Shown piece after piece: positions 3,201 through 64,000 of a DNA stretch of 64,000 nt. Each line of letters opens with the position of its first letter. Position 1 is the stretch's first letter. The stretch lies in the IMG/VR virus record IMGVR_UViG_3300029984_000001, positions 1 to 64,000 of that record; one strand, written 5' to 3'. The notes beneath the pieces are model-generated. The model ran no database searches and was not told the origin of the DNA. It saw only the letters and a list, made by a program, of their open reading frames with translations. The position numbers were made by a program, and so were the translations under genes.

Positions 3201-6200
3201 AGATTCACCAAAAATAGAATTAGAAACAGTAGACCCAACATCACTACTATTAGATTTATATATTTTACTGTTATTCTTTAGACTATTATTATCAGAATCT
3301 TTTATAGGACTAAGTCCAGGTAAATGAGCTAATGTAGAATTATAAAATTGAGTTAAGAATCCTTTAAATCCATTTAGAATGAATCCACCTATACCAAGTA
3401 CACCTTCTTTAACAACTGCACCTATACCACTTACAACAGCAGGTATAATTGTTCCAGTAATGAATGGGACTACTTTATCTTTTAAATATGGTATTACTGT
3501 AGATTTAGCAAATCCAATTAATTGTGGAGCGAAGGCAAACCCTAACATTCCTTTCATTAATGTAGATGCTATACCAACGGTTTTTAAATCTGTAGAATTT
3601 GATATAAAATCAGCAGCTTTACCCCTAACTTTTTCAACATTTCTAGATAAAAATGTCATCATTTTATTTTTATAAACTTTATCTTGTTTATTATCTCTTT
3701 CAACTTCTTGAGTTTGTATATCACCTTTATTATAGATTTTATTATTATTACCATCTATATGATATTCCCTACCATCCTCATCTCTTTGATTCTTATTAAC
3801 ATTTCCTTTAAGATTATATTTAGAAGGCATTGATATCAGATTTGGTTTTTTATTAATTTCCTTTGTATCATATGATAATTCATTTGCATCTATCTCTTCT
3901 TTGGTTACATATTCCTTTTCACCTCTCGTATTCATATAATATAATCTATTATCAGAATCTTTCAATATTTTCTTTTTCTCTTTTGAATTATAAGAATCAA
4001 ATGCAGATAAAGCCCTATTTGAATTTGGAGATGGATGAGCTATATCATGTAATGTGGTAATAATTTCTTCCATTTTACTATTTATTTTTTCTCTAAATGT
4101 TTCACTTCTTTCTGATTCTTGTTCTTGTAATACTTCCATTCTTTCTTCTGGAGTTTTAGTTTCATTCTTTTTCTTATTTACATTAATTTCTTTATCTAAT
4201 AGATCTATATACTTCGATAATTTTTCAGGATTATTAAGTACACTATTAGGAATTTTAACACCAGATTTTTTTAATTTATCCATGAAATCCACATAAGATT
4301 CTGTTTGTTTATATCCTTTATCTACAGATGTATTATAATTATTAACTTTACTAGCAAGACTTCTTTTTAATGTTTCTTTTTCACCGTCAGACATATGTTT
4401 AGGATTAATATTATCAATCATTTTAAAGGCTATATCACTCTTGCCGTCCCTAATCAATTTCATAATCTTCTTAGATGTAAAGTATCCAACGTCTTTACTA
4501 ACATGCCCACCCATATCGTCTATCATAGATACTCTATCAGATTTATTCTTCTTATAATCTGTTCTCATATTAGAAAAACTATCTCTCATCATATTAAGTT
4601 TCTTAGAATCACCTTGAGTGAACCCGTCAATTAATTGATCAAATTCAGAGGTTTTATCTCCTAATCCCATTGCATGTTTTCTTCTAAAGTCTAATCTTTC
4701 AGAAGCAGTCATATAATCAGCAGTACCATTTTTTATTTGACGTTTTCTTAAACGATTACCAGCCATATTTATTAATCCTATAGGTGCTCCGATTAATCCC
4801 TTTAATGCCTTACTACTTATCCATGTTAATGCTTTACCTACAGGACCAGCGATTTGTGCTACTAACTTAGATAACGGTACACCTAAACTACTTTCAATTA
4901 TTTTATCAAATATTTTAAGAACACCTTTACCTAGACCTTTAGCCATTAATTCCATTTGTTTAGAGAATGGTTTTACAGATGTAGCTAATTTTTCGAACAC
5001 ATTCTTCTTAAACCACGTTACAGCTCCATCCCTTTTCTCTTTTAAAAAAGCAGACATAGGATCTACAATCTTTTCTCTAAAATGAGGTAATAGTCCACCG
5101 ATATATTTACCATGACCATCTGGTTTACCGAATATAAAGTTTTGGAATTTTTCTGATGTTGTAGCCATACCAATAGCAGAACCAAGAAAAGCATTTCCCA
5201 TAATACCAAATGGTAATGGACTTGCTATAGCAGCAACCAAAGCTCCTGCTCCAATTCTAGGCAACATTGATTTCATCTTTTCTTTCTTTTTACCTAACCA
5301 CGATTCATTATTTTTACCGAATAACCATTCTTTCATTCTACCAGTATCTTTAGCATAAGCAAAAGATGCACCTAACATAACTCCACCTATTGGACCAAAA
5401 GGCATAAATGGTAACAATCCTGCAACTCCACCCACAATTCCATAATTCTTTAAATCTGGCAATAACTTCTTCATTTTATTTACAAATTTACTACTTGTGG
5501 CTTTTGCGACGAATCCACCTTTACGTTGTTTATCCCCATTTTCATCAGTAAATTCCTCACCAAACAACCAGTTTTGCATTGTCTCAGAATGTTTAGTTAT
5601 AGATATTCCTGCTCCAATTGCAGCTCCTAATAATGGTCCACCTAACATTCCTGTGACTAAAGATACACCTGAACCTAGTAATGCTGAACCTATAGCTTCA
5701 GGAGCATAAGTTGTAATTCCTTTAGATGCTTCTGATATAAAATTAGATACTTTCTTCTTTTCTGCTAATATTTTCTCTGGAGTTAATTCTTCATTACCAT
5801 TAGTTAAACCAGAAAAGACTTTAGTAGCAGCATTCTTTAATTCACCTTTCATTTGGTCTAGATAATCTGTAAATATATTACCATCTTTAGAAGGGTTTTT
5901 TAATTCACCTAATACAGTTTTTAATATACCAGCATATTGATTATTTTTTTCTTGAGAAGAGAAAGATTCTTTTATCTTATCATGATTAATCATATTCAAC
6001 ATAGTAGACATTGTATCATTATAATCATCTGAATCTTGTTCTTTCCCTCGAAGCATATTCTTCATTTTTAAATGAGTTCTTTTTGCTATATCTTCATTAG
6101 ATACCTTATCACTATTTACATCATTAACAGAAGTCTTTATAAACTTTTTAAAGTTTCTCCATTGTTCTGCTTCTTTTACTGGAAGTACAGCCTCACCTCT

Positions 6201-9887: not shown

Positions 9888-12800
9888 ATGATATTTATAG
9901 ACGAAATAAAATCTCTTAAGTTGTATAATAAACCTTTTTATCTTCCTATTAATCTAAAAGATAAGAAGAGAGGAAGTTCTGTATTTCTTTTAGGTAGAAA
10001 TACCTATCCAGATGGTAGTGGTTATGCTGCTGCTGATATATTATCATCTAATCCATTACTTAATAAAAAATATTTCGAATCTTATTATATAGAAAAAGAT
10101 GTTACTTTCTATATAAATAATGAAGGTTATGTAATGGTTGATAAAATGTCGAAAGTGTTAAATGAAGATAGTTTAGATAAGTTATCAACTGTATTTGGTA
10201 CTGCATCATCATTAAGTATGAGACATTACAAGAATAATGGGACAGATGATGATCCTAATATCGACAAAGACGATAAAGGACAACCAAAATTAAAAGAAGG
10301 CGAAATAAATCCAGATGACACTAAAGACAACAAATTAAAAGCGGATGTATCTAAATCCGAGGACGCTGAACCAACAAATCCAAATAGTACAGATAGTAGT
10401 AATGATAATATAGATACAAATGAAGATGATAAATCTAAATTAAAACAAGATTCAAGAATAAATATATGGGATGAATTAGATAAGGTAGAAGAAAAAGGTG
10501 GAAATAAACATGAATTAATATTTGAATTAACATTCAAAGATTATGATAATAATTATGAATCTCCACGTTCTAGAAATAGTTTATCTAAATATTCTTCTAT
10601 TAAAATACATGATAGTTCCCAATTTAAACATGTTAGAATAGGTAAGAATTATAACGGAAAAGCTTTTTATGATGGAGATGCTTTAGTGGGATATGTAAAT
10701 GTAAATAAAGATAATAATACTATTCAGGCTATGGAAGTGTCTAAAGAGTATCAAGGAACTGGTTTAGGTTCTCAAATATTAAATTTTGCTATAAAAAACC
10801 TCAATGCGACGAATCTTACTGTAAATAAAAAGAATAAAGTTGCTATTAATATGTACAAAAAAAGTGGTTTTGAAAGTTATGATGAGACTGAATATATGTG
10901 GTTTATGAAATTAAATAATAGTAAAGTTGTAAAAGAACAAGTTATGAATGAGTTTTCTAGTTATGAAATGATAAGTGATTTTATGGGTATGATTAAACAA
11001 GCTAAAATAGATGCTTATAATAAAGAATGTCAAGAAAGAGCTTTACAAAATAGATTGATGTTAGAAAATGGAGTTATATCTGAAGGTAATTTTGAGCAAG
11101 AATTAGTTCCAGACGAATTTATAGGTAAAATAGAAGACTCTCTTACTGGTGGTTTCATAGAGTTTGTAAAAGAAGATTGTTCTGTTGTGTTGGGAATTAA
11201 GAGTGAGTTAGAATATATGAATGAAAATATAAATTCTAGTTATAAAAATAAAATTCATAATCTATTATATAATGATAGATTTAAAACTCCTAAAGAAGTT
11301 TTAAATCAGTATGATACTGTAAAAGAAAAAAATTCTGATATAAAATATACTTATTTAAATTATGATAAATATGTTGGAAAAAACTTGTTTATAGATTTAT
11401 CTTTTTATAATGACTCTTTCTATAAAAATAATTCACTTACAAATGACAAAGCTGTAGATTTCTATATTGATTTTATAAAAAGATTAATATTAGATAAAAG
11501 ATTAGATGGTATTTATAATAAGAGAACTATACTTATACCGTTAGACCATGTTATAGAAGATAAGAGAGATTTAATTTATACTCAAAGTATAAATATATTA
11601 TCTTGTATTATAAGAATGATTAATGATAAACATCCTGATGGTTTATGGGATTTTAAAGGTATAGAATTTTTATTATTATCCAATAATGGATATATGAAAT
11701 TTGAACCTGATAAATTGACTAAAGAAGATATTCCTAAATTTGAAAGTCTATTAATAAAATTTGTCAATAAAGAACCGATAGTTGATGATAGTAACATAAA
11801 AGATTCACCGCAAGCTATAGTCGCTAATATATCGGATAAAATTGAAACTTCACAAGGTATTAAGATACATAATCTTACAGGACAAAGTGGAGATAAGAAT
11901 ATAGATGATATAATTAATAAAGTATCAGATGTAGCATCTAAATCTATGTCAGAGGATGAAACTCTGGATAAATTAAATGATAATGATACAGATGATTTCA
12001 AGAATTTAGTTTTAAAAGCAGCTGTAACAAATGGTGAGGTAAAAATCAATGCAAGTAGACAAGCTAGATTAAATAAAGTACATGAAGAATTTATGAATGT
12101 AAAGATAAAGAATAAAACAGTAAAAGAATTATTATCTAAAGAAGATGAGAATAAGGAGTTACCCACTTTATCTTTAAATAATAAAATAGATACAGTAAAT
12201 GAGGAGTGGAATGATTTAAAATTTGTGAATTTCAATACTGTGTATGATATAAATAAAGATATAGTAGATATTCTAAATTCATTATCTACTAAGAAAAATC
12301 CTATTATGGTTAGGGATATACAAATAGAAGATACATCAACTTCTGAAGATATGGTGGAGACATGGACTGTTAAAATGGAAGATGCACATGGTCAAAGATT
12401 TAGTTTCGTATTTGAATTACCTAAATTTAAAGATAAAAGTTCATTATTTCTAAGAGGTAATAAGAAAAAGATCTCTGGACAATATGTATTAATCCCTATA
12501 TCTAAAACAGATGTTTATACAGCTCAAATTGTATCTAATTATAAAAAGATATTTATTAGAAGATTTGGATTGTCTGCTCCAGGAAAATCTTATCCAACTG
12601 CTGATTTGATTTATAAAACTTTATCTAAAAACGAATTTAAAGGATTAAAAATAACTCCAGGAGATAATACTAAAATATCTAATAAGTATGATCTTCCAAT
12701 GGATTATATAGATTTAGCTACTATATATTCTACAATAGAAACACCTAATACTATTATATATTTTAATCAAGATGAAATTAATAAAAAATATAAAGATAAA

Positions 12801-15116
12801 ATAGATAATAATAAAGGTTTACCATTTGCTGTAAATAAATCTAATAATAATATTATATATTGGAATGATAATGTTGTATTATCTGATATGATTTCTACTC
12901 AAATAAGTGTAGATATAAAAGATTATAAAGAATCTTTTGATTTACAAAAAACTAGTACTAAATACCATTATTCACAAGCAAGTATACTAGCATCAAAAAT
13001 TCCATTAATTGTTGTATTAGGTTACAATGAGGGTTTAACAAAAGTATTAGATAAATCAAAGATAGTATATAATATGCAAGAAAAAAGACCTTCTATAAAT
13101 AATACATTTGAAGATTACATAAAGTTTAAAGATGGATATATCGTCTATACCTTAACTTATGATTCTTCATTATTAATGAATGGGTTGAAAGAATGTAATA
13201 CAGAGGACTATTCTTTAACTGAAATAGATAATCCTACGATGTTTTTAGATTTCTTAGATATTTATGGAGGTAGAATATTAGCCGATGGTCTGGATAACTT
13301 TTATGAGTTAATGATAGATGGGATAACAGAAGATGTATTAGAAAGATATAATTTACCGACAGATTATGTTACACTTTGCTTACTAGCAAATAAATTGTTA
13401 GTGGATAATAAGTATATAGCTCATACTAATCCTGAAAGTAATCGTTATAGAAGTAATGAATTACTAGCTGGTTATGCGTATCAATGTATAGCTACGTCTT
13501 ATGGTGATTATAAGACATTTATTAAAAAGGGTAAGACTAAACCTATGACTATGAAGAGAACAGCTATTATAGATGCTATATTATTAGACTCAACTTGTGG
13601 GGATAAATCTGTATTAAATGAAATAATGGATTGGGAAGATGAATGTGCTTTATCTCATAAAGGTCTATCTGGTATGAACAATGATAGATCATATTCTTTA
13701 GATAAGAGAACTTATAATAAAAATATGATTAATCTTGTAGCTATGTCTACTGGATTTGCTGGTAATGTTGGAGTTAATCGTTCTTGTACAATAGATTCTA
13801 ATGTTCAAGGGAAAAGGGGATATCTTAAAATAGATCATAATGAGGATCAGTATTCTATTACCAAGACATTTTGTCCTACAGAAGCATTGACTCCTTATGG
13901 AACTACTTCTGATGATCCTTTTAGATCAGCTATGACATTTATACAAACAGGTTCTCATAGTATGAGAGTTAAAAAAGGTATGCCTAATTTAGTTACTAAT
14001 GGAGCAGACCAAGCGATGCCTTACTTTACATCAAACACATTCTCTTATAATTGTAAAGCTGATGGTGAGGTTGCAGAATTAACAGATTCATATATGGTGT
14101 TGAGATATAAAGATGGTACTCATGAATTTATAAGTTTAGAAGAAAAGGTAGAAAAGAACTCTAATGGTGGTATTTATATTACTATTAAATTAGACCCTTG
14201 TGTTAAACAAGGTCAAAAAATAAAAGCTAAAGATATAGTTGCTTATGATAAATTATCATACTCTAATAAAGTTGGGGATGGACGTAATCCTGCCTACTCT
14301 GGTTATGTAATATGTAAAATGGCTGTAATGAATACTGAGGAAGGTTATGAAGATAGTACAGTCATTTCTGATTGGTTATCAGATGCAATGGCTTCTGATG
14401 TTGTAATAAAGAAAGAAGTTATAATACCTAAAGATTCTAATATTCTTTCTATGGTAAAGAAAGGTCAACCTATTAAAGAAGGAGATTCTTTAATGGTATT
14501 CCAAAATGCATATGATCAAGAGGATGTAAATATATTATTAAAGAATTTATCCGATGATGAGGATGGTATTTCTGAATTAGGAAGAATTCCAATTAAATCT
14601 CATGTTGAAGGAATTGTACAAGATATAAAGATTTCTAGAACAGTAGAAATAGATCAATTATCTGAATCATTACAAAAAATAGTTAAAGCGTATGAAAAAC
14701 CAATTAGAGATAAAAAACAAATATTAAGTAAATATGATATTCCTAATAATGGTTTATTAGATGCCGATTATAAATTAGATAGTACTGGTAAATTGAAGAA
14801 TGTAGATGAAGGTTTATTAATAGAAATATTCTGTAAGTATGAAGATAAGCTATCTACAGGTGATAAGCAGGTGGCATACTCAGCATTAAAAGGAGTAGTT
14901 AAAGGAATGTATCCAAAAGGGATGGAACCTTTCAGTGAATTTAGACCTGATGAGAAAATACATACAATTACCGCTGTGGAAGGAATTTTAGCTCGTATGA
15001 TTGGCAGCCTTGAAAAAGTAGGTAGTATAAATAAAGGTTTAATAGAATTGGATAGATTGGTTAAAGACAAACTAGGAATTAAATGGAAATATCTAGAAGA
15101 GATGATGGAAAACTAA
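9888..15116 (+). CDS. rpoB: Split multisubunit RNA polymerase beta subunit (likely virion RNAP) with a long N-terminal extension containing a GNAT domain
   Basis: FELPKF..LRGNKKKISGQ; ALTPYGTTSDDPFRSAMTFIQ (cf. [20 protein letters not shown]); VMNTEEGYEDS (cf. GYNFEDS); GDK..LKGVV (cf. GDK..NKGVI). Ends before the bacterial beta C-terminal clamp segment, as in phiKZ/AR9-type split RNAPs. Confidence 0.92.
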   Translation: MIFIDEIKSLKLYNKPFYLPINLKDKKRGSSVFLLGRNTYPDGSGYAAADILSSNPLLNKKYFESYYIEKDVTFYINNEGYVMVDKMSKVLNEDSLDKLSTVFGTASSLSMRHYKNNGTDDDPNIDKDDKGQPKLKEGEINPDDTKDNKLKADVSKSEDAEPTNPNSTDSSNDNIDTNEDDKSKLKQDSRINIWDELDKVEEKGGNKHELIFELTFKDYDNNYESPRSRNSLSKYSSIKIHDSSQFKHVRIGKNYNGKAFYDGDALVGYVNVNKDNNTIQAMEVSKEYQGTGLGSQILNFAIKNLNATNLTVNKKNKVAINMYKKSGFESYDETEYMWFMKLNNSKVVKEQVMNEFSSYEMISDFMGMIKQAKIDAYNKECQERALQNRLMLENGVISEGNFEQELVPDEFIGKIEDSLTGGFIEFVKEDCSVVLGIKSELEYMNENINSSYKNKIHNLLYNDRFKTPKEVLNQYDTVKEKNSDIKYTYLNYDKYVGKNLFIDLSFYNDSFYKNNSLTNDKAVDFYIDFIKRLILDKRLDGIYNKRTILIPLDHVIEDKRDLIYTQSINILSCIIRMINDKHPDGLWDFKGIEFLLLSNNGYMKFEPDKLTKEDIPKFESLLIKFVNKEPIVDDSNIKDSPQAIVANISDKIETSQGIKIHNLTGQSGDKNIDDIINKVSDVASKSMSEDETLDKLNDNDTDDFKNLVLKAAVTNGEVKINASRQARLNKVHEEFMNVKIKNKTVKELLSKEDENKELPTLSLNNKIDTVNEEWNDLKFVNFNTVYDINKDIVDILNSLSTKKNPIMVRDIQIEDTSTSEDMVETWTVKMEDAHGQRFSFVFELPKFKDKSSLFLRGNKKKISGQYVLIPISKTDVYTAQIVSNYKKIFIRRFGLSAPGKSYPTADLIYKTLSKNEFKGLKITPGDNTKISNKYDLPMDYIDLATIYSTIETPNTIIYFNQDEINKKYKDKIDNNKGLPFAVNKSNNNIIYWNDNVVLSDMISTQISVDIKDYKESFDLQKTSTKYHYSQASILASKIPLIVVLGYNEGLTKVLDKSKIVYNMQEKRPSINNTFEDYIKFKDGYIVYTLTYDSSLLMNGLKECNTEDYSLTEIDNPTMFLDFLDIYGGRILADGLDNFYELMIDGITEDVLERYNLPTDYVTLCLLANKLLVDNKYIAHTNPESNRYRSNELLAGYAYQCIATSYGDYKTFIKKGKTKPMTMKRTAIIDAILLDSTCGDKSVLNEIMDWEDECALSHKGLSGMNNDRSYSLDKRTYNKNMINLVAMSTGFAGNVGVNRSCTIDSNVQGKRGYLKIDHNEDQYSITKTFCPTEALTPYGTTSDDPFRSAMTFIQTGSHSMRVKKGMPNLVTNGADQAMPYFTSNTFSYNCKADGEVAELTDSYMVLRYKDGTHEFISLEEKVEKNSNGGIYITIKLDPCVKQGQKIKAKDIVAYDKLSYSNKVGDGRNPAYSGYVICKMAVMNTEEGYEDSTVISDWLSDAMASDVVIKKEVIIPKDSNILSMVKKGQPIKEGDSLMVFQNAYDQEDVNILLKNLSDDEDGISELGRIPIKSHVEGIVQDIKISRTVEIDQLSESLQKIVKAYEKPIRDKKQILSKYDIPNNGLLDADYKLDSTGKLKNVDEGLLIEIFCKYEDKLSTGDKQVAYSALKGVVKGMYPKGMEPFSEFRPDEKIHTITAVEGILARMIGSLEKVGSINKGLIELDRLVKDKLGIKWKYLEEMMEN

Positions 15117-15157: not shown

Positions 15158-15174
15158 ATTTTAACTTTATCTAC

Positions 15175-33222: not shown

Positions 33223-34518
33223 ATGAGGGAGAGATTTATTATGTGTAAACAAAAAGACTTAGTACAACAATCAATTGAGGATAAAACATATTCAAATTTT
33301 CATGAGGCTATTAGAAAAATATTTACAAAAGAATACTTCTATAAAGATTATGTTGATAATTTTACTGAACATGAAAAAACTTTTTTAATTAATCTTAAAG
33401 ATTTAAGAGTAAGACTTAGAGAATTCAATTATCCAGTACATAATATAAGTAGGCTTGGTGAATATAATGATTATAAAGATATTTTTGTAGTATATCATGA
33501 AGCTGATATAGATGGTCATAGTGTAAAAATAATCAACGGTCTATTAAATAATGGTGATATGTCTAATACTTTTGGTTGTGATGTAAGAGCTGATGAAGCT
33601 TTTGATATTATAAAAGAAAAATTAGATGAAGGTATGTTTGTAATAGTTGCAGATTTAAACTTTACAGAAGAATATGCTGAAAGAGTAGAAAATGAATTAG
33701 ATACTTCAAGATTTATATTATTAGATCATCATGGACATGCTATGTATTTAAATCAATATGATTGGGCTTTTGTGTTATCTCATGATGAAGAAAGTTTATA
33801 TTTATCTTCTGGTACTTTATTGTATTCTATGTTTTGTGTTGCTAACTTTAATTGCAATTTAATATTAGATACAATAATAGATTTAGCAATGAATACTGCT
33901 TTGTATGATACTTGGTTCTGGTCTTCTAATTTTGATTATACTAGAGAATTATCTGAAAAGTATTTTGGTAATAGACCAGAAGATATATGTATGTTATTTA
34001 AATCTATGAGTAAAGATAAATATGCTCAACATGTTTTAAATAATATTAATAATTTTCATGATATATTTGATAATGATGATAAATTAAAAATAAAATTTAT
34101 GAGAGATATGACTAGAAAAACTATTTATAGATATTACCATAATATGAGAATAGTAAACATTGATGATAAAAAGATTGGAATAGTATTTGGAGATAATGAA
34201 GTTTCTGCTGTTGGTAATTTTATTTTAAGAGCTAATAGAGAATTATCTTATTTTGCTATGGTAAATTTAAATAGTAATCAAATATATCTTAGATGTAGAA
34301 ATGATTATGATGTAAAAGAAATTGCTATTAGGAATGGTGGAGGAGGTCATACTCAAGCTGCTGGATTCCCTATGATTGATATATTATTTAATGATAAATT
34401 CTTAATAGATTTATTATCAAAAACACATCAAGTAGAAGAAGATTGTTTAGCATCTATTAAAATGATAAAAGATTGTGCAGAATTTGATGAAGATACTAAA
34501 GTATATAGATTAAGATAA
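33223..34518 (+). CDS. DHH/DHHA1 phosphoesterase (nanoRNase/NrnB-like)
   Basis: YHEADIDG, ADLNF, LDHH, GGGHTQAAG. Confidence 0.88.
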   Translation: MRERFIMCKQKDLVQQSIEDKTYSNFHEAIRKIFTKEYFYKDYVDNFTEHEKTFLINLKDLRVRLREFNYPVHNISRLGEYNDYKDIFVVYHEADIDGHSVKIINGLLNNGDMSNTFGCDVRADEAFDIIKEKLDEGMFVIVADLNFTEEYAERVENELDTSRFILLDHHGHAMYLNQYDWAFVLSHDEESLYLSSGTLLYSMFCVANFNCNLILDTIIDLAMNTALYDTWFWSSNFDYTRELSEKYFGNRPEDICMLFKSMSKDKYAQHVLNNINNFHDIFDNDDKLKIKFMRDMTRKTIYRYYHNMRIVNIDDKKIGIVFGDNEVSAVGNFILRANRELSYFAMVNLNSNQIYLRCRNDYDVKEIAIRNGGGGHTQAAGFPMIDILFNDKFLIDLLSKTHQVEEDCLASIKMIKDCAEFDEDTKVYRLR

Positions 34519-35710: not shown

Positions 35711-37064
35711 ATGAATAAAACTGTAATAAAAGAATTTTTAATTAAAGAAGCGAAGAAAGAAATCAAAAAACAATTAGTGAATACTATATTTAGTAATAAT
35801 AATAAAAAGAAAGTAAAAGATTTAATATTCTCGAAAATATCATCATCTTATAAAGTATCTACAGTTAAAAATACTATATCATTAGAATATAAATTCTTAA
35901 TACACTGGATTAGAGATATAAAAAATAAAGAACTTTATAAAAATTTAAAACAATTCGAAAATAATGATGTCATGTTATTAGAAAATGGGGAATATAAAAT
36001 ATTATATGAAAATAATTTAATATTAATAAAATCATATACAGATGATATGTACATATAATATAATAATAGATGTTATTGGTAAAACAGGTAAAGAAATTGT
36101 TGAAGACATCATAGAATACATAGTTTCTAGTATTAAGAATGTTAGAAACACTAAAAAAGATCCAGACAGTATATACATAGATTATAAAAGATTTCCTACA
36201 GACGATTATTATATTTCAATATTAGGAAGAAAATTAGAAACTATATATTCTGAACAAATTGATGATATAATAAATATTATATGCAATTGGTCTAATGATA
36301 GTGATATATATCATAAACATGGACTAGCATTTAAAACTGGTATTATATTACATGGTGTTCCAGGAACAGGAAAAACCTCGATAGTTAAAGCCTTATCAAC
36401 ATATTTCGCCATGAATATGATTACATTAAATATAGCTTCTATATCTGCTAAAGATTTAATAAAATTTTCTCAACAAATAAGAACAGATGAAAATAAGATA
36501 GTATTATTAGAAGAAATAGATTTAAGAGATTCTGATGAAAAAGATAAAAAAATGCAAGAACTACTAACTCTATTAGATGGGGTTGATGGAGTAAATAATA
36601 TAATATTTATAGCTACTACTAATGATATTGATGGGGTTGATGTACGATTAAAAAGACCAGGAAGGTTTGATAATATAATCGAGATTACAAATATAAATAT
36701 AGATTTAGCTACTAAAATGTGTGAAAGTTTTAAAGTTGATTCTAATATAGTATTAGAAAATTATAATATTAAATTTCCTAATTCAGAAAAATACAATCCA
36801 GCTACATTGCAAGCAGAAATATTAAATGAATATCATAAACAAAAATCAAATATAAATAATATTGTAAATATAGACAATATTAACCTTAAAAATAAATCTA
36901 ATAATAAAACTTCATGTAAAGCTGAATATACACCATCATCTTATATAGGGGAGGTAAATTCGTTTAATATAAATAAGGGAGTAGATAATAAGTGGAATTC
37001 AAACGGACACCGTATTTATGGTTCTGAACCAATATATGATGAAAAGATAATAGCAACTAATTAA
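35711..37064 (+). pseudogene. BCS1-like AAA+ ATPase copy 2, split by a frameshift at about 36050-36060
   Basis: ORF 35711-36058 aligns with the N-domains of copies 1 and 3 (W..GEYKILYENNLILI); ORF 36042-37064 has no RBS but carries GVPGTGKTS/LEEID/RPGRFD. Confidence 0.8.
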
Positions 37065-37091
37065 TTTTAATTTATAGGAGTGTGTATTAAA

Positions 37092-38252
37092 ATGAATAAT
37101 AAAATATTAAATGTTTTGGTAAAAGAATCTAAACAAATGGCTATCCGTATAATAAGAGATAAAACATCAAAATTAATATCAGATAATAAATACAGAAATT
37201 GTGTGAAAAATGATATACTTTCTAAATTTAGTAGAAATTTAAAATTGATGGGTCATGAAGACAAATTTAAAATTAAATATGTTAGGATTATAAGATGGTT
37301 AATAAAAACTTTTAATATAGAGGATGTGTATATGCTGGATAGATTCAAATCCATTCCATACAAATGTTACACTTTCAAATATAATGGCTCTGTGTTGTAT
37401 ATAGATCATAGCAAAGAAGGGGATAATATATTATTAGATATAAAAATAATAACTATCAAAAAAGAAATAGGTGATAATATATATAAAGAATTAGTAGATA
37501 TATCAGCAGGGTCTCTAGAATGTATTTCGGATTCATCAAATAATTTTATAGCTATGTATAAATGTGATGGTGAAGATATATGTGATAGAATGTTGGTACC
37601 AAAAAGATCATTGGATACTATATTCTCTAATGAATTACCATTAATAATTTCCGATTTAGAAAACTTTATGAGTAAAAAATCTATATTCAAAAAACATCAA
37701 CTTCCATTTAAAACTGGTATATTTTTATATGGGGAACCAGGAACAGGTAAGTCTTCTATCGTAAAAGCCATTGCATCTAATTTTAATATGGATATATTTT
37801 ATATCAATTTAACTGAATTGAATTATGGTCAATTAAAGAATACTGTTAATGATATTAACGGTAGAACTCGCAGAATAAGAACTTCAATAATATTATTAGA
37901 AGAAATTGATCTATCAGAAAATGAAGATAACTCATTCAATGAAAAGAATAAAAAATTAAGTTTATTATTGAATTGGTTAGACGGACAAGAATCACCATCA
38001 GATATAATATTTATAGCTACTACCAATTATATAGATAAAGTTGATGAAAGAATAAAAAGATCTGGTAGATTTGATTATAAATATGAAATAAGTCAATTAG
38101 ACGAAGATCAAGCTTCTAAGATGTGTATGAGTTTTGACATAAATCCTAAAGAGATATTAGAATTAGATGAGTTTAAAGATTGTGTTACATATAGTCCCGC
38201 AAAAGTTCAAGAATATATTTTAAAGAAAATAGTGGTGGGTATAAATGAGTAG
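37092..38252 (+). CDS. BCS1-like AAA+ ATPase copy 3 (intact, 386 aa)
   Basis: GIFLYGEPGTGKSS, LLEEID, WLDG, ATTNY.DKVDERIKRSGRFD; AGGAG RBS. Confidence 0.9.
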   Translation: MNNKILNVLVKESKQMAIRIIRDKTSKLISDNKYRNCVKNDILSKFSRNLKLMGHEDKFKIKYVRIIRWLIKTFNIEDVYMLDRFKSIPYKCYTFKYNGSVLYIDHSKEGDNILLDIKIITIKKEIGDNIYKELVDISAGSLECISDSSNNFIAMYKCDGEDICDRMLVPKRSLDTIFSNELPLIISDLENFMSKKSIFKKHQLPFKTGIFLYGEPGTGKSSIVKAIASNFNMDIFYINLTELNYGQLKNTVNDINGRTRRIRTSIILLEEIDLSENEDNSFNEKNKKLSLLLNWLDGQESPSDIIFIATTNYIDKVDERIKRSGRFDYKYEISQLDEDQASKMCMSFDINPKEILELDEFKDCVTYSPAKVQEYILKKIVVGINE

Positions 38253-58364: not shown

Positions 58365-59588
58365 TTGAGATATCCTAAAATGATTGATAAAGAAGAAGAT
58401 GTAAAATATATATTAAATCTTAAACCTTCTGATGTTACTAAATCAACAGTAATAAAAATGTTTGGAGAGTTTAATGGTAAAGCAAGATTTAATCCTTATG
58501 ATGAAATAATGATTCCTAAGGATGCTTATGGTGAATCTCCTTGGAAGAATAAAAAACCTTTCTTAACAACTGTTGGATTATGGATGTTTAATATCCATTT
58601 TATATCAGAGAAATTTACACATGTATTCGATGGTTATATAAATAAAACTATAAATGGTAAAGAGTTTGGTAAAATGAATTCCAGATTATCTTATGCTTTA
58701 ATGGAAGATGATATTACTACAGATGACATGGATTATTTTTTTATGAGATGTGAAAAGTTCATGCCATTTGTTTCTATAATTTCTCCAACCATGAGTGAAA
58801 AAATGTTAACCTGTGGTACAGTAGCAGCTAAGAAATTAAATGAATTATATAAGAAGAAATATAAAGAGAGAATAGATGCTAAAGATCCTTTTGCTGCTGA
58901 TCAAATGGAACAAGAAGTATTAGATTACATGAGAGTGTATTTAGATGGTGATGAGTCTATGGATTTATTTGATTCTGGTGCAAGAGGAAGCTTTGGTAAT
59001 AACTTTAAAAACATGTTTGTTAGTAAAGGTGCTACAAGAGACCCAGACACTGGTGAATATAATATAATTATGAGTAATTATATGAATGGTATATCTAAAA
59101 AAGACTATGCTCCTATGTCTAATTCATTGGCTAGTGGACCTTATGGTAGAAGCCGTTTAACGGCACTTGGAGGTTACAAAGAGAAGCAAATATCGTCCGC
59201 GTATCAACATGTCGTACTCATGGACGGAGGATCTGATTGTTTAACTAAAAGATATATTGAGGTTTTCTTAACGGATAAAAATGTAGAAGAATATATGTAT
59301 AATTATATAATTGATGGTCCAGATTTAATTGAAATGACAAGTAAAAATATGAAAAAATATATAAATAAAGTTGTTAAAATGAGATTCTCTAATATGTGTG
59401 AATCGAAAAATGGATATTGTAATAAATGTGCTGGAAACATGTTCTTTAGATTAGGATTTAAGAATATAGGTCTAGCCTTATCTATTATAGCAGCAACTCA
59501 AAAACAAAAAACGATGAAGGGTTTCCACGATTCTACAATTAAATTTACTGAGATGAATCCACTTAAAGCTTTTACAGGACATTTTTAA
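58365..59588 (+). CDS. rpoC: Split RNA polymerase beta-prime subunit, C-terminal part (bridge helix and trigger loop)
   Basis: SGARGS, SNYMNGI, TALGGY..SAYQ..SDC, MC..GYCNKCAG zinc site, NIG..QKTMKGFH (cf. QLTMRTFH); TTG start with AAGGAGG RBS. Confidence 0.9.
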   Translation: MRYPKMIDKEEDVKYILNLKPSDVTKSTVIKMFGEFNGKARFNPYDEIMIPKDAYGESPWKNKKPFLTTVGLWMFNIHFISEKFTHVFDGYINKTINGKEFGKMNSRLSYALMEDDITTDDMDYFFMRCEKFMPFVSIISPTMSEKMLTCGTVAAKKLNELYKKKYKERIDAKDPFAADQMEQEVLDYMRVYLDGDESMDLFDSGARGSFGNNFKNMFVSKGATRDPDTGEYNIIMSNYMNGISKKDYAPMSNSLASGPYGRSRLTALGGYKEKQISSAYQHVVLMDGGSDCLTKRYIEVFLTDKNVEEYMYNYIIDGPDLIEMTSKNMKKYINKVVKMRFSNMCESKNGYCNKCAGNMFFRLGFKNIGLALSIIAATQKQKTMKGFHDSTIKFTEMNPLKAFTGHF

Positions 59589-59596
59589 TTATTCAT

Positions 59597-59622
59597 TATA
59601 GAGAGGATAATTCCTCTCTATA
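59597..59622 (+). terminator. Intrinsic terminator
   Basis: TATAGAGAGGA/TCCTCTCTATA stem, T-run. Confidence 0.75.
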
Positions 59623-59672: not shown

Positions 59673-60464
59673 ATGAAAACGTTTATGACTAGAATACCAA
59701 TAATACCCGAATCAACGGAAAGAATAGCTGATTATTTTCCAGAAATTCAAGATATATACACAATAACTAATAAAGGGAAAATATATAGTGAAGTTGCAAA
59801 TAGAAATCTAAAACCAAAAATAAGTAAGAAAGGTTATGAAGAGTTAAAATTAAGATTAAAACCAGAATTTCATGTTGGTAATAGAGAAGAAAAACATTTC
59901 TCTGTTCATAGGGGAGTAAAGTTATGTTTTGACCCAATACCAAACCCAGAAAAATATCAAGTAAATCATGTATTGGGTATTAAAACAATAAATGAAATAG
60001 AAGTATTAGAATATTGTACTAATAGAGAAAATATGGATCACGCAATGAGAATGAATTTGGTCTCTAAATGTGAAACTAAATATAATGCTACTCTGACAAA
60101 TGAACAAGTCCATCAAATATGCAAATACTTACAAATAGGGATGCCGTATAAAGATATATCTAGAATTATGTTGAATAGAGATGTAGATAAAAGTATAAGC
60201 GATATTCTTAGTTCAATTAAACATAATCGTAGTTGGTCTGATATATCCTTACAATATAATTTTGATATCAGTAAACCTCATTATCAAATTTTTAATGATA
60301 ATCAAATAGAAATTATATTAAATCATATCTCTGACGGATTGGATAATAATAACATTTTAAAATCTATGAATTATGATTTAGAAAACATACCATCAGAAGT
60401 TATAAATAAATTAAATAATGATATGAATGCTATTAGAAATGGTGCTAAATCTTCAAGAGGATGA
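59673..60464 (+). CDS. Free-standing NUMOD4/HNH homing endonuclease, possibly degenerate
   Basis: YTITNKGKIYS..LKP..KGY..L; VHR; VNHVLGIKTINEIEVLEYCTNRENMDHA. Confidence 0.8.
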   Translation: MKTFMTRIPIIPESTERIADYFPEIQDIYTITNKGKIYSEVANRNLKPKISKKGYEELKLRLKPEFHVGNREEKHFSVHRGVKLCFDPIPNPEKYQVNHVLGIKTINEIEVLEYCTNRENMDHAMRMNLVSKCETKYNATLTNEQVHQICKYLQIGMPYKDISRIMLNRDVDKSISDILSSIKHNRSWSDISLQYNFDISKPHYQIFNDNQIEIILNHISDGLDNNNILKSMNYDLENIPSEVINKLNNDMNAIRNGAKSSRG

Positions 60465-60488
60465 TAGAGAGGGATTATCCCTCTCTAT
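60464..60488 (+). terminator. Intrinsic terminator
   Basis: ATAGAGAGGGA/TCCCTCTCTAT stem, T-run. Confidence 0.75.
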
Positions 60489-60512
60489 ATTTTAACGAAT
60501 AACATCTCCTAC

Positions 60513-60525
60513 AACTATATATTAT
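60513..60525 (+). promoter_or_regulatory. Early-type promoter motif
   Basis: AACTATATATTAT. Confidence 0.6.
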
Positions 60526-60565
60526 ATAAGTGTATATAAATCAAATTTTAAGGAGATGTTTATAA

Positions 60566-61954
60566 ATGGAAGAGAAAATCAAAGAAAACCAAGTACATAT
60601 TGTAGTATTTGATCAGAATGGATTACCTACGGTAAGAGTTTTTACAGACCTAGACAAATGTTCTGATTATGTTAAATTTATATCATTAAAGACTAATATA
60701 TTCACAAAAGGTATGTTTACAGAAACTCTTGATAGAGGATCGAACGAAATAAAATACACCGATAATAATTTTATAAAAGTATGGAAAGATTCACATCCAG
60801 AACCTACTGAAGAAAACCAATTACATGTAGTATTATTTTCATTGGATGGAAAACCTTTAGTACGAGTTTTTACTGATTTAAGTAAAGGTGCTGAATATCA
60901 AAACTATATATCATTAAATCGTCATATTACGGTTTATATGTTTACAGAAACTATTGATATAGGATTAGAAGAGATGAAATCTATGACTCCTCTTATGTTT
61001 CCTGAAGTATGGGGAAATGCATATCTGGATTCTGATCAAAATTATAAACAAATGAAAGAACTCGATATAGATCAAGAATGTAACAAAATGAATTTAAAAG
61101 ACGATATTAAAGCTAGGGGATTTATTCAAACTAAGAATGAATCTGACATTTCTGAAGAAAAAGAAGAAAGTTCTTTTATAACAATGAAAGTCCCAGAATT
61201 CTTAGGGATAGGTTCGGCATTTAATACAGACTTAGGTAATACTTCTTGTTATTTTATAGAGCTAGATACATTAATATTAATTGATTGTGGTAGTGATGTA
61301 TTTCCTAAAGTAAAGAAAATATTGAATAAATATGATTATATAAAACACGTTAATATATTAATAACACACATGCATTCAGATCATACAGGTTCATTACCTA
61401 CCCTAATAGAATATTGTTATCATACTAAAAAGATAATACCTGAAATAATATATCCTGAACAATCAAAAATGAGAGATATGCTAAATGATCATTTAATTGG
61501 AGAAGAATTATATAGTACGGATTTTCATTCTTCACCAATAAGAGGTGAAAAAGGATATTGTGTAACGTCTACTAATAGTGCTGTTAAATTCAAAATAAAT
61601 ACTATAAAATTAGTACATAATATATATAATGATTGGTATTCGTATGGATATATAATAAATCGTTCTGATAAAACTTTTATATTTGTATGGGATACTTGTG
61701 ATGTACATCCAGAAATACATAGTATCTTTAGATCTGAATGTAATAGATTAGGAAGTGAAAATGTATATTTATTTCATGATGTTTATTTTGAAGATTTTGC
61801 GGGATGTCCACATACCAATTTTAATAAAATTAAAAGTGTTATAACCAAAAATAAAGATAGAGTTTTCTTTGTACATTTAGATAATAAAGAAGAGTTAGAT
61901 AAGATTGCTAAAGAAAGTGGATTTGGTGATATAAATTTATTCTATAAAAAATAA
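60566..61954 (+). CDS. Metallo-beta-lactamase-fold hydrolase fused to a duplicated N-terminal domain
   Basis: FLGIGSAF, LIDCG, ITHMHSDH (THxHxDH), HT, FVHLD; two N-terminal repeats of about 75 aa. Confidence 0.85.
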   Translation: MEEKIKENQVHIVVFDQNGLPTVRVFTDLDKCSDYVKFISLKTNIFTKGMFTETLDRGSNEIKYTDNNFIKVWKDSHPEPTEENQLHVVLFSLDGKPLVRVFTDLSKGAEYQNYISLNRHITVYMFTETIDIGLEEMKSMTPLMFPEVWGNAYLDSDQNYKQMKELDIDQECNKMNLKDDIKARGFIQTKNESDISEEKEESSFITMKVPEFLGIGSAFNTDLGNTSCYFIELDTLILIDCGSDVFPKVKKILNKYDYIKHVNILITHMHSDHTGSLPTLIEYCYHTKKIIPEIIYPEQSKMRDMLNDHLIGEELYSTDFHSSPIRGEKGYCVTSTNSAVKFKINTIKLVHNIYNDWYSYGYIINRSDKTFIFVWDTCDVHPEIHSIFRSECNRLGSENVYLFHDVYFEDFAGCPHTNFNKIKSVITKNKDRVFFVHLDNKEELDKIAKESGFGDINLFYKK

Positions 61955-63084: not shown

Positions 63085-64000
63085 ATGGGAAATTTTGAGG
63101 TAAAATGCTCGTATCCTAATAATCCGAATTTTACATATGAACCCACACTAGAAGTTATTAATATGGATGAGGACAAGAAATATAATATATTATATGAGGA
63201 TGGTTTTGTTCTTAGTGGAATTCAAAGTTCATTCAAGAAAGATCTGAAGAATCCATCAGGTATTTTCTCTACTAAATTTGGACAAGGTCTAGGAGATATA
63301 AATGCGTTTGATAATAGATACAAATGTACATGTGGTAATGTTAATCAAAGAATTCATAACGGAGCTATATGTCCAGATTGTGGGACTAAAGTAAAATATG
63401 TAGATGATAATTTAAATATATTTGGTTGGATGACTGTTCAAAATTATTGGATTATACATCCTAATCTATTTAAAGCAATAGCATCATATATTTCTCCTAA
63501 GAAATTTGAAAAGATTATAGGATATGAAGAGAAGAAAGATCAAAATGGGCATAAAATAATTGTAGAATATCAACCAGATAAGGAAAAGAAAGAAGAAAGA
63601 TATTTTGGTTTAGGGTTAATAGATTTTAAAGAGAAATTTGACGAGATCATGCAGTTCTATTATACTCCTAAGAAGAAAGAAAAATATGACCACATCATGA
63701 AGAATAGAGATAAAGTATTTACACAATCTATTGCCGTGTTCTCTAGTCTCCTCAGACCTACCGAAACGACGTCTGACAAATTTATATTCGAAAGTTCTAA
63801 TGCTCAGTATCATATGATGACTAAATTAGTTACTTTATTAAACGACAAGTACATAAGGAGTTCTTACGGTAAGAAAACAAAAAATCAATTACTATATGAT
63901 TTGTGTTTAAAATATCAAGAATTATATGGAGAGATTGAAAACATATTATCTTCTAAGAAAGGACAACTAAGACAATGCTTTGGTGGTAGATCTTCTTTTT
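63085..64000 (+). CDS. rpoC: Partial CDS: RNA polymerase beta-prime N-terminal subunit (likely non-virion RNAP); absent from ORF track
   Basis: GGAGGGAG RBS; open frame to window end: GIFSTKFG..YKCTCG..GAICPDCGTKV..GWM..IIHP..SIAVFSSLLRP..SKKGQLRQCFGGRS (cf. GLFC.RIFG, CxC..CxxC, PV.PP.LRP, GK.GR.R.NLLGKR). Confidence 0.93.
   Translation, partial: MGNFEVKCSYPNNPNFTYEPTLEVINMDEDKKYNILYEDGFVLSGIQSSFKKDLKNPSGIFSTKFGQGLGDINAFDNRYKCTCGNVNQRIHNGAICPDCGTKVKYVDDNLNIFGWMTVQNYWIIHPNLFKAIASYISPKKFEKIIGYEEKKDQNGHKIIVEYQPDKEKKEERYFGLGLIDFKEKFDEIMQFYYTPKKKEKYDHIMKNRDKVFTQSIAVFSSLLRPTETTSDKFIFESSNAQYHMMTKLVTLLNDKYIRSSYGKKTKNQLLYDLCLKYQELYGEIENILSSKKGQLRQCFGGRSSF

What the first reader, a model, noticed from the sequence alone, without database searches (positions are those of the whole stretch)
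60566..61954. MBL-fold hydrolase (anti-Pycsar Apyc1-like candidate) fused to a novel duplicated domain
Seen: two repeats, ENQVHIVVFDQNGLPTVRVFTDLDKCSDY..MFTETLDRG..FIKVW and ENQLHVVLFSLDGKPLVRVFTDLSKGAEY..MFTETIDIG..FPEVW, precede an MBL domain starting FLGIGSAF with THxHxDH. Known: phage Apyc1 proteins are MBL-fold cyclic-NMP phosphodiesterases. Inference: an early anti-defence nuclease with an uncharacterised sensor or targeting module. An RNase Z-like role is the alternative.
Basis: partly seen in the sequence, partly recalled or inferred. Interest (0 to 1): 0.6.

Follow-up and report, generated by a model that had tools for sequence, protein, structure and literature searches.

The report
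Phage metallo-phosphodiesterase with duplicated orphan domain
A jumbo phage gene fuses two copies of a small, unannotated phage domain to a metal-dependent phosphodiesterase that is a cousin of the anti-Pycsar enzyme Apyc1 but lacks the parts that make Apyc1 cut cyclic mononucleotides, so its real substrate is open.

Summary
Window 60566..61954 (+) is one 462-aa ORF. It has two N-terminal repeats (47% identical, E 4e-21), an acidic linker and a complete metallo-beta-lactamase (MBL) phosphodiesterase domain with HMHSDH and all metal ligands.

- **Apyc1:** the MBL domain sits in a well-supported clade of phage-type MBLs that contains Apyc1, far from RNase Z. It is in a sister group, not in Apyc1 proper. 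PF23023 scores 17.5 bits against a cut-off of 50. The catalytic E74 and the Y112 nucleotide-binding loop are missing.
- **Tested relative:** the only assayed member of that loop-less group I found (Staphylococcus phage Madawaska) cut cNMPs weakly or not at all.
- **RNase Z:** it lacks the RNase Z flexible arm, and the 263.6-kb phage genome has no tRNA genes.
- **Nucleotide-signal link:** bacterial members of the loop-less group are fused to GAF-GGDEF domains.
- **N-domain:** it has no Pfam or PHROG family and no clear fold match. It does occur as free-standing 58-87-aa proteins in metagenomic phages, and as a single copy in a related jumbo phage.
- **Expression:** the gene has its own terminator, RBS and a copy of the genome's dominant, AR9-early-like promoter motif.

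Verdict: a new variant of a known kind, substrate unknown.

The parts
60465..60490 (+). Terminator-like hairpin (AGAGGGATTATCCCTCTCT plus a T-rich tail). It closes the upstream HNH gene and isolates the MBL gene as its own transcription unit.
   Evidence: stem 60468-60486; sequence. It is nearly identical to the hairpin at 59597-59622.
60511..60525 (+). Promoter-like motif ACAACTATATATTAT, 55 nt upstream of the ATG. It is one of 29 genome copies of AYARYTRTATATTAT.
   Evidence: 29 copies against 0.4 in shuffles, 27 of them on the + strand, most 20-90 nt upstream of gene starts. Its core resembles AR9's annotated early promoter AAATTTATATTAT. Promoter function and timing are inferred.
60550..60556 (+). 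Ribosome-binding site AAGGAGA
   Evidence: AGGAG-type words are the most enriched upstream 9-mers in this genome.
60566..61954 (+). Whole coding sequence, 462 aa plus stop (P0001)
60566..60799 (+). N-domain copy 1 (aa 1-78): beta-beta-alpha-beta core with the signature V-x-V-V-x-F-x-x-D/N-G ... R-V-F-T ... F-x-E-T-x-D-R-G
   Evidence: (model pLDDT 76, about 90 over aa 10-40)
60800..61045 (+). N-domain copy 2 (aa 79-160), 47% identical to copy 1
61046..61180 (+). Acidic, low-confidence linker (aa 161-205)
   Evidence: pLDDT below 50, almost no secondary structure. It is not conserved among relatives.
61181..61951 (+). MBL-fold binuclear metallo-phosphodiesterase domain (aa 206-462), Apyc1-sister 'loop-less' type
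61367..61384 (+). Motif II HxHxDH (H268 M H270 S D272 H273), the metal-binding core

Best explanation
**What the gene encodes.** It is a two-part enzyme of a roughly 264-kb AT-rich jumbo phage that is a distant relative of AR9 and the Staphylococcus jumbo phages.

**C-terminal half (shown).** It is a complete MBL-fold, two-metal phosphodiesterase of the class that includes Apyc1, YhfI and RNase Z. It belongs to a phage-borne sister group of Apyc1. That group also holds AR9 g022, MBLBt2 (PDB 7FCT) and the Madawaska 'RNaseZ-like' protein. It keeps every metal ligand but lacks both the Apyc1 nucleotide-binding loop and the RNase Z tRNA arm.

**How it most likely works (inferred).** It probably acts as a dimer, as its solved relatives do. 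It would hydrolyse one phosphodiester bond of a nucleotide-type substrate between the two metal ions. The most likely substrate class is a nucleotide second messenger other than the small cNMPs that Apyc1 takes. A cyclic di- or oligonucleotide is one candidate, because the pocket is not narrowed by the Apyc1 loop. That would make it a counter-defence or signal-quenching enzyme.

**N-terminal half (shown).** It is a tandem pair of a roughly 60-70-aa beta-beta-alpha-beta domain. This domain is otherwise found as free-standing small proteins in metagenomic phages.

**Role of the N-domains (inferred).** The two copies probably pack into a pseudo-dimer and act as a binding module for a partner or ligand, tethered to the hydrolase by a flexible acidic linker.

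**Expression (features shown, function inferred).** The gene has its own terminator-like hairpin, promoter-like motif and RBS. The motif is of the class that precedes replication and nucleotide-metabolism genes.

**How sure.** About 0.85 for the anatomy and family placement. About 0.4 for the function as a phosphodiesterase for a nucleotide signal other than cNMPs.
For: - **Anatomy:**
- **Intact catalytic motifs:**
- **Nearest solved structure:** 7FCT, MBLBt2 of Bacillus phage BMBsp2, at E 1e-23 by sequence and TM 0.83 by fold. It ranks ahead of the Apyc1 structures 7U2R, 7T28 and 7U2S (TM 0.65-0.72), then the YhfI-like proteins, then RNase Z.
- **Tree of 52 MBLs:** a 41-row clade (support 97/98) holds the validated-type Apyc1 subclade and the window subclade, both at 100/99. 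RNase Z lies outside. With long branches removed, the Apyc1 group (7 rows) and the loop-less group (34 rows, SH-aLRT 84) separate, and the window falls in the latter.
- **Link to nucleotide signalling:** three Lachnospiraceae or Oscillospiraceae proteins of the loop-less group have the architecture MBL-GAF-GGDEF. This parallels the well-known cyclase-phosphodiesterase fusions of c-di-GMP signalling, which I cite from general knowledge.
- **No phage tRNAs to process:**
- **Conserved gene and position:** a related jumbo phage (L001, about 75% nt identity) has the gene in the same place between RNAP subunit genes.
- **Own expression signals:**. Genes behind other copies of the motif include topoisomerase II, a polymerase, an RNAP subunit and dCTP deaminase.
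- **N-domain as an independent unit:** seven free-standing homologues of 58-87 aa, and a single copy in P0003.
- **Repeat-repeat packing:** weak support only. Score 0.52 against a best control of 0.02. The mark was reached by 51 of 78 solved complexes and 2 of 108 mismatched pairs, but scores of 0.60 or under are more often wrong than right unless the guess was likely beforehand. The runs agree in at least 71% of contacts, and the partner's pLDDT is at least 63.
Against: - No substrate was tested, and none can be with these tools.
- The GAF-GGDEF fusions lie in a different subclade of the loop-less group, so the transfer of function is indirect.
- In PMC11724313 the assayed loop-less relative (Madawaska) was tried only on four cNMPs, so nothing is known about larger cyclic nucleotides.
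- The neighbouring genes encode RNAP subunits whose best AR9 match is a virion RNAP subunit, and a virion structural protein. These are not a typical anti-defence island.
- The promoter class is assigned as early-like only by its resemblance to AR9.
- The N-domain has no fold match above noise (best Z 4.5), so its binding role is a guess.
Confidence: 0.42

Rival explanations
1. It is a true Apyc1-type anti-Pycsar enzyme. It hydrolyses cCMP and cUMP (and cAMP and cGMP) to 5'-NMPs and so blocks Pycsar effectors. The N-domains are only an accessory.
For: It shares a supported clade with validated-type Apyc1. Apyc1 structures are the second-best structural neighbours. It shares the GSAF...N-x-S and F-H-D motifs with Apyc1. 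Weak PF23023 and NF041851 hits exist.
Against: PF23023 scores 17.5 bits against a cut-off of 50. The E74 position is Pro (GSLPT instead of GGLEE). The segment carrying Y112 and the Apyc1-specific loop is deleted. Both residues were required for cCMP hydrolysis (PMC9117128). Homologues with altered loops, including the Madawaska protein that groups with the window here, cleaved cNMPs weakly or not at all (PMC11724313).
Confidence: 0.15
2. It is an RNA (or DNA) nuclease of the RNase Z / RNase BN kind. It would trim or degrade host or phage RNA 3' ends, or degrade host nucleic acid. The N-domains would bind nucleic acid or a host RNA-processing protein.
For: The best NCBIfam hit is RNase Z (46 bits). 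Relatives are often annotated RNase Z or RNase BN. The gene lies between RNA polymerase subunit genes in two related phages. The H-T at H416 resembles the RNase Z H-S-T motif.
Against: The RNase Z score is 46 bits against a cut-off of 293 and covers only the N-terminal half of the model. The flexible arm that holds tRNA is absent, and the HEAT motif reads FHD. RNase Z is the outgroup of the tree. The phage has no tRNA genes. The N-domain shows no match to known nucleic-acid-binding folds.
Confidence: 0.22
3. The MBL domain acts on a non-nucleotide small molecule (lactone, thioester, beta-lactam or similar), or is a structural or virion-associated protein whose catalysis is incidental.
For: The MBL fold is chemically versatile. 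The closest solved protein was deposited as a 'metallo-beta-lactamase' (7FCT) with no publication found. The neighbours include a virion structural protein and a homologue of a virion RNAP subunit.
Against: All close structural neighbours with known chemistry are phosphodiesterases. The motif set is the class II phosphodiesterase / RNase Z set, not that of the B1-B3 lactamases. True beta-lactamase and glyoxalase models score at noise level.
Confidence: 0.08

Closest known systems
MBLBt2 of Bacillus phage vB_BtM_BMBsp2 (PDB 7FCT), with AR9 g022, BpSp gp142 and the Herelleviridae 'metal-dependent hydrolases' (PHROG 392)
   Same: Same loop-less, roughly 240-250-aa MBL phosphodiesterase-type domain. 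About 30% identity over the whole domain and TM 0.83. Carried by large virulent phages of Bacillota. AR9 g022 lies in a block whose nearest upstream annotated promoter is an early one.
   Different: These proteins are single-domain, with no N-terminal repeats. They form a different subclade. Their PF23023 scores are about 50 bits, against 17.5 here. I found no published function for them.
Apyc1 (SBSphiJ gene 147; PDB 7T28, 7U2R, 7U2S; Pfam PF23023)
   Same: Same larger clade, same fold, same metal ligands, and the same GSAF and FHD motifs. Phage-borne.
   Different: The window protein lacks E74 and the Y112-bearing loop that reaches into the partner's pocket. It falls below the family threshold. 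It carries an extra 205-aa N-terminal region.
Staphylococcus jumbo phage Madawaska QQO92874.1 ('RNaseZ-like protein')
   Same: It belongs to a jumbo phage of the AR9-like RNAP group. Its MBL is 29% identical and falls in the same loop-less group. I found no other member of that group that has been assayed.
   Different: It is single-domain. It reads Y-T-D where the window and Apyc1 read F-H-D. It is reported to cleave cNMPs weakly or not at all (PMC11724313).
RNase Z (TIGR02651) and YhfI-type class II phosphodiesterases
   Same: MBL fold, HxHxDH, and the general two-metal phosphodiesterase mechanism.
   Different: The window protein has no flexible arm or exosite, a different N-terminal loop motif, and a score far below the family cut-off. 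RNase Z is the outgroup in the tree.
MBL-GAF-GGDEF proteins of Lachnospiraceae and Oscillospiraceae MAGs (L025, L035, L044)
   Same: Their MBL domain belongs to the same loop-less group. They are another example of this MBL type fused to accessory domains.
   Different: Their fusion partners are C-terminal, known signalling domains. They are bacterial, not phage, and sit in a different subclade.

Membership tests
Metallo-beta-lactamase superfamily (PF12706 / PF00753) | Family score over the gathering threshold, and motifs I-V (D, HxHxDH, H, D, H) | tested here: met
   33.2 bits against 27, and 30.9 against 22.7. D240, H268/H270/D272/H273, H351, D376 and H437 are conserved.
Apyc1 (PF23023; Hobbs 2022) | Pfam gathering score of 50 bits | tested here: not met
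   17.5 bits, covering only profile positions 7-71 of 250. SBSphiJ3 Apyc1 scores 201.6 and AR9 g022 scores 50.0 in the same test.
Apyc1 (PF23023; Hobbs 2022) | Placement inside the clade of experimentally validated Apyc1 proteins | tested here: not met
   The window subclade (100/99) is separate from the Apyc1 subclade (100/99) within a shared 41-row clade. It falls in the loop-less sister group.
Apyc1 (PF23023; Hobbs 2022) | Catalytic E74 and Y112 supplied by the opposing protomer, and the Apyc1-specific nucleotide-binding loop | tested here: not met
   GGLEE becomes GSLPT (Pro at the E74 position), and the LKGGLRYPDED... segment is deleted in the alignment. The requirement is stated in PMC9117128.
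Apyc1 (PF23023; Hobbs 2022) | Hydrolysis of cCMP and cUMP to 5'-NMP, and protection from Pycsar | not testable with these tools
   This needs biochemistry and plaque assays. Indirect evidence against it comes from the loop-altered homologue assayed in PMC11724313.
RNase Z (TIGR02651 / NF000801) | Equivalog score cut-off (293 or 252 bits) over the full model | tested here: not met
   46.0 and 45.4 bits, over model positions 4-153 of 302 only. True RNase Z proteins score 306-365 bits in the same test.
RNase Z (TIGR02651 / NF000801) | Flexible arm (exosite) inserted before motif IV, and HEAT / HST motifs | tested here: not met
   The roughly 25-residue insertion present in all five RNase Z rows is absent here. 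The HEAT position reads FHD. H-T-N stands where RNase Z has H-S-T.
Loop-less phage MBL group (PHROG 392; 7FCT-like) | Full-length similarity to PHROG 392 and 7FCT, and a domain of about 250 aa without the Apyc1 loop or the RNase Z arm | tested here: met
   PHROG 392 at 2e-20 over aa 211-453. 7FCT at E 1e-23 and TM 0.83. Tree placement. This group is defined here, not curated elsewhere.
N-domain family (defined here, no database entry) | A core of about 60 aa with V-x-V-V-x-F-x-x-D/N-G-(4)-R-V-F-T ... F-x-E-T-x-D-R, and beta-beta-alpha-beta secondary structure | tested here: met
   Both copies match the profile, with domain E-values of 1e-25 to 1e-29 depending on the database searched. There are 12 aligned members with invariant G19, V25, F26, F51 and D56. 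No Pfam or PHROG family matches at E below 0.01.

The most novel reading that the evidence does not exclude
The N-domain is a new family of small phage counter-defence proteins, either a ligand 'sponge' or an inhibitor that binds a host immune component. This jumbo-phage lineage would then have welded two copies of it to a loop-less Apyc1 cousin. The result would be a 'bind-and-cleave' enzyme that destroys a nucleotide immune signal other than the Pycsar cNMPs, for example a CBASS, Thoeris or type III CRISPR signal. That would also give the large, uncharacterised Herelleviridae and AR9-like MBL group its first function.
Probability: 0.13. Interest if true: 0.75.

Novelty: new variant of a known kind. 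Interest (0 to 1): 0.45.

Why it matters
Hundreds of large Bacillota phages carry an MBL hydrolase (228 GenBank phage records matched here). These proteins are variously annotated as RNase Z, beta-lactamase, metal-dependent hydrolase or Apyc1.

This case shows that the group splits into Apyc1 proper and a loop-less sister group whose substrate is unknown. The one assayed member of the sister group I found did not behave like Apyc1. So automatic 'anti-Pycsar' calls on such genes are probably over-reaching.

The fusion to a duplicated orphan domain that also circulates as a free-standing small phage protein gives a handle on both unknowns: the substrate of the loop-less MBLs and the role of the small domain. 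If the enzyme turns out to degrade another immune signal, it would be a new counter-defence family. If it is an RNA-processing enzyme, it would bear on jumbo-phage transcription biology.

Tried and rejected
- **Word search with the N-part alone (aa 1-165):** nothing found. The exhaustive profile search was needed to find the relatives.
- **Spurious profile hits:** three hits were discarded. P0006 and P0015 are low-complexity tandem repeats. P0011 is an OmpA-family protein with CarboxypepD_reg-like repeats. They match only the beta-hairpin.
- **Fold searches with the N-domain model (pLDDT 76):**
  - VIA-align best Z was 4.5, with no chain at Z 5 or above. The list mixed PsaD, T7 Gp2, phi29 p56, a PII-like protein and BMC proteins.
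  - Foldseek gave no E-value below 0.3.
  - The ESM Atlas returned only unnamed small viral proteins.
  - I do not treat any of these as a relationship.
- **DUF7336 (PF24024) lead:** one family member hit it at E 0.046, and an Atlas feature match scored 0.80. There was no hit in the phage genome or in 201 genomes of the class of G001 (Lysinibacillus), so I could get no sequences for a profile comparison. The lead is unresolved and weak.
- **N-domain in GenBank phages:** no match by tblastn with P0001, P0012 or P0014.
- **Paralogues and adjacent genes:** there is no paralogue in the phage's own genome. No free-standing N-domain gene lies next to the domain-less sister MBLs, so there is no fission or fusion evidence.
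- **Second repeat in P0002 and P0004:** only noise-level matches (E 0.14 and 2.1).
- **Literature on 7FCT / MBLBt2:** none found.
- **The look-up of sequencing runs:** I did not try another route.
- **Rfam on 54.6-66.8 kb:** no match.
- **Plain TATATTAT as a promoter mark:** too common (147 + 144 copies). Only the 15-nt extended motif is informative.
- **Complex prediction for repeat 1 with repeat 2:** weak support only. Score 0.52, best control 0.02; the mark was reached by 51 of 78 solved complexes and 2 of 108 mismatches, but passes at 0.60 or under are more often wrong than right unless the guess was likely beforehand. I use it only as a hint.
Full report
**1. What is there**

Window 60566..61954 (+) is a single open frame of 462 aa (P0001). 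It has an ATG start and an AAGGAGA ribosome-binding site at 60550-60556. Nothing of 40 aa or more is open on the opposite strand inside it.

The window is the first 64 kb of a 263,571-bp single-contig virus record of about 25% G+C. Two IMG/VR contigs are 100% identical to this stretch. A Logan contig (L001) is a relative at about 75% nucleotide identity.

The RNA polymerase fragments that flank the gene resemble those of Staphylococcus jumbo phages, AR9/PBS1 and phiR1-37 at about 31% amino-acid identity. So this is a distant member of the jumbo phages that carry their own multisubunit RNA polymerases.

**2. The repeats are real**

Residues 1-78 and 79-160 align at 47% identity over 76 positions, E 4e-21. 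A profile of the domain hits aa 1-73 and 81-147, with domain E-values of 1e-25 to 1e-29 depending on the database searched. After them comes an acidic stretch (aa 161-205). It is modelled without structure and is not conserved among relatives.

**3. The MBL domain is real and looks catalytically complete**

- Pfam Lactamase_B_2 and Lactamase_B pass their thresholds.
- PHROG 392 'metal-dependent hydrolase' scores 2e-20 over aa 211-453.
- H268-x-H270-x-D272-H273, D240, D376, D405, H416 and H437 are invariant, and H351 nearly so, in the alignments with relatives.

**4. Which MBL?**

*Sequence against solved structures.* The best match is 7FCT (E 1e-23, whole domain). This is MBLBt2 of Bacillus phage vB_BtM_BMBsp2. 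Bsp38 Apyc1 (7T28) follows at 1.6e-4 over the whole domain. ELAC2 matches only the first 70 residues.

*Fold.* 7FCT has TM 0.83. The three Apyc1 structures have TM 0.65-0.72. After them come the YhfI-like proteins and then RNase Z.

*Family models.* PF23023 (Apyc1) scores 17.5 bits against a cut-off of 50. RNase Z scores 46 bits against 293.

*Tree.* A careful maximum-likelihood tree of 52 MBL domains was rooted on five true RNase Z proteins, which score 306-365 bits. It shows a long-stemmed 41-row clade (support 97/98). That clade contains:
- a subclade with SBSphiJ3 and Grass Apyc1 and Paenibacillus proteins scoring 235-254 bits on PF23023 (100/99);
- a separate subclade with the window protein, its three fusion relatives and two domain-less proteins, P0018 and P0019 (100/99).

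With four long-branch rows removed and the Madawaska protein added, the clade splits in two. One part is Apyc1 proper (7 rows, SH-aLRT 95). The other is a 34-row group (SH-aLRT 84) holding the window subclade, AR9 g022, BpSp gp142, MBLBt2, the Staphylococcus phage proteins and many MAG or prophage proteins.

*Alignment.* Apyc1 proper has GGLEE after motif II and an inserted segment, LKGGLRYPDED and following residues. The window protein and the whole 34-row group have GSL-x-x and lack the segment. Hobbs et al. showed that E74 and Y112, contributed by the opposing protomer, are needed for cCMP hydrolysis. They also described the Apyc1-specific loop that reaches into the pocket (PMC9117128).

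*RNase Z.* RNase Z rows carry a roughly 25-residue arm before motif IV, and an H-E motif where the window reads F-H-D. The window has neither.

*Assay data from the literature.* Tesson et al. purified QQO92874.1 of Staphylococcus phage Madawaska. Like other homologues with shortened or lengthened loops, it cleaved cNMPs weakly or not at all (PMC11724313). I confirmed that this protein is the Madawaska MBL that matches the window domain (29% identity). It falls in the same loop-less group.

*Conclusion.* The domain is a cousin of Apyc1, not a member of Apyc1 proper, and not an RNase Z.

**5. Other evidence on function**

- The phage genome has no tRNA genes. This removes the obvious substrate for a phage RNase Z.
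- Three bacterial proteins of the loop-less group (L025, L035, L044; Oscillospiraceae and Lachnospiraceae MAGs) are MBL-GAF-GGDEF fusions. GGDEF cyclases are classically fused to the phosphodiesterases that destroy their product (general knowledge). This links the MBL type to cyclic-nucleotide signalling, but it is an inference from a different subclade.
- Without the loop that narrows the Apyc1 pocket, a larger nucleotide is a reasonable guess, and it is only a guess.

**6. The N-domain**

*Relatives.* The full-length word search found three relatives with the same layout:
- P0002 (497 aa) and P0004 (464 aa), each with one clear N-domain followed by about 140 aa of other sequence;
- P0003 (351 aa), with exactly one N-domain.

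An exhaustive profile search of 1.84 billion representatives found 12 proteins. Seven are genuine free-standing proteins of 58-87 aa (P0007-10 and P0012-14). Three are spurious repeats. The other two are P0003 and P0004.

*Signature.* The family signature is V-x-V-V-x-F-x-x-D/N-G-(4)-R-V-F-T ... F-x-E-T-x-D-R, with invariant G19, V25, F26, F51 and D56.

*Genomic context.* The free-standing genes sit in phage contexts among small accessory genes:
- next to YopX;
- next to Bro-N;
- between terminase and portal genes;
- on a contig with holin and amidase genes;
- near a methyltransferase and a DHH phosphoesterase.

None lies beside an MBL gene.

*Family and fold.* No Pfam or PHROG family matches. 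An AlphaFold model built on the 12-sequence alignment has pLDDT 76, about 90 in the core. Its order is beta-beta-alpha-beta-alpha. It has no solved neighbour above noise.

*Packing of the two copies.* A complex test of repeat 1 against repeat 2 gave weak support. The score was 0.52 and the best control 0.02. The mark was reached by 51 of 78 solved complexes and 2 of 108 mismatches, but passes at 0.60 or under are more often wrong than right unless the guess was likely beforehand. The runs agree in at least 71% of contacts, and the partner's pLDDT is at least 63.

*History.* In the tree the four fusion proteins form one group (95/92) nested beside domain-less P0018 and P0019. So the domain was probably acquired once in this lineage. 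The clean tandem duplication is seen only in the window phage.

**7. Expression signals and neighbourhood**

*Layout.* The gene order is RNAP fragment (58365..59588), then the HNH endonuclease (59673..60464), then the MBL gene. The HNH gene is absent from L001. Nearly identical terminator-like hairpins follow both upstream genes, at 59597-59622 and 60465-60490.

*Promoter-like motif.* Fifty-five nt upstream of the ATG lies ACAACTATATATTAT. It is one of 29 copies of AYARYTRTATATTAT, against 0.4 expected. Of these, 27 are on the + strand, and most lie 20-90 nt upstream of gene starts. They are often followed by TGAATAA.

*Timing.* AR9's two annotated early promoters in the fetched region both read AAATTTATATTAT. 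Genes behind other copies of the motif include topoisomerase II, a polymerase, a second RNAP subunit and dCTP deaminase. This fits an early or middle class. However, the flanking RNAP fragment is most like AR9's virion RNAP subunit g264, and a virion structural protein lies upstream. Timing is therefore inferred, not shown.

*Conservation.* The position between RNAP genes is the same in L001.

**8. Verdict**

The best-supported mechanism is a dimeric two-metal phosphodiesterase acting on a nucleotide-type substrate other than the Pycsar cNMPs, tethered to a tandem binding module. I put about 0.4 on that function, 0.15 on true Apyc1 activity, about 0.2 on an RNA or DNA nuclease role, and the rest on other chemistry.

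It is a new variant of a known kind. Its value is that it marks the boundary of Apyc1 annotation and pairs two unknowns in one protein.

Noticed in passing
window 59597-59622 and 60465-60490, flanking 59673..60464: An HNH endonuclease gene (PHROG 959/59) sits between two nearly identical terminator-like hairpins. It is absent from the related phage L001. It looks like a mobile cassette that inserted just after a terminator and duplicated it, or brought its own copy.
   Followed up: partly
window 63085..63999, continuing to G000 64275; insert at G000 64276-65567; second part at G000 65568-65918: The RNAP beta' N-terminal gene is uninterrupted in L001 (499 aa). Here it is cut after about residue 389 by a roughly 1.3-kb insert carrying a second HNH gene, 40% identical to the first. 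The two halves match L001 residues 4-387 and 387-499. No Rfam intron family matches, so whether this is a split gene or an intron is open.
   Followed up: partly
whole genome G000; in the window at 15173, 22031, 25839, 32486, 40639, 43312, 45269, 51498, 53563, 60511 and 62992: A promoter-like motif AYARYTRTATATTAT, often followed by N4-5 TGAATAA. There are 29 copies against 0.4 expected, 27 of them on the + strand, most 20-90 nt upstream of gene starts. It resembles AR9's annotated early promoter AAATTTATATTAT.
   Followed up: partly
window 9888..15116 (+): A 1742-aa RNA polymerase beta-like protein (PHROG 3148, 4.6e-132 over aa 640-1727). Its N-terminal part (aa 240-337) matches acetyltransferase families, which is an unusual fusion.
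   Followed up: no
window 33223..34518 (+): A DHH-family phosphoesterase (PHROG 4771, 2.7e-16). It is a second candidate nucleotide or oligonucleotide phosphodiesterase in the same phage. A free-standing N-domain gene in another contig (L084) also lies near a DHH/DHHA1 gene.
   Followed up: no
G000 239248-240639 (outside the window): A dCTP deaminase homologue (PHROG 1663, 4e-42). Its RNAP is akin to those of AR9 and the Staphylococcus jumbo phages, and AR9/PBS1-type phages are known (general knowledge, not tested here) to use uracil in place of thymine. The two together hint that this phage may do the same.
   Followed up: no
whole genome G000: ARAGORN finds no tRNA or tmRNA gene in 263.6 kb, which is unusual for a jumbo phage.
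   Followed up: yes
L025:1495-3231, L035:1495-3213, L044:1258-3102: Oscillospiraceae and Lachnospiraceae MAG proteins with the architecture MBL (Apyc1-cousin type)-GAF-GGDEF. I did not look for a published description of this architecture.
   Followed up: partly
P0005 (metagenomic, 319 aa): A relative of the MBL domain carries a roughly 95-aa, Lys/Glu-rich, coiled-coil-like extension at the C-terminus instead of an N-terminal domain. It is another accessory fusion on this MBL type.
   Followed up: no
window 282..9014 (-): A giant 2910-aa ORF on the minus strand at the start of the window. It was not examined.
   Followed up: no
window 36042..37064 and 37080..38252 (+): Two adjacent paralogous AAA-type ATPase or clamp-loader-like genes. 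Both match PHROG 7485.
   Followed up: no
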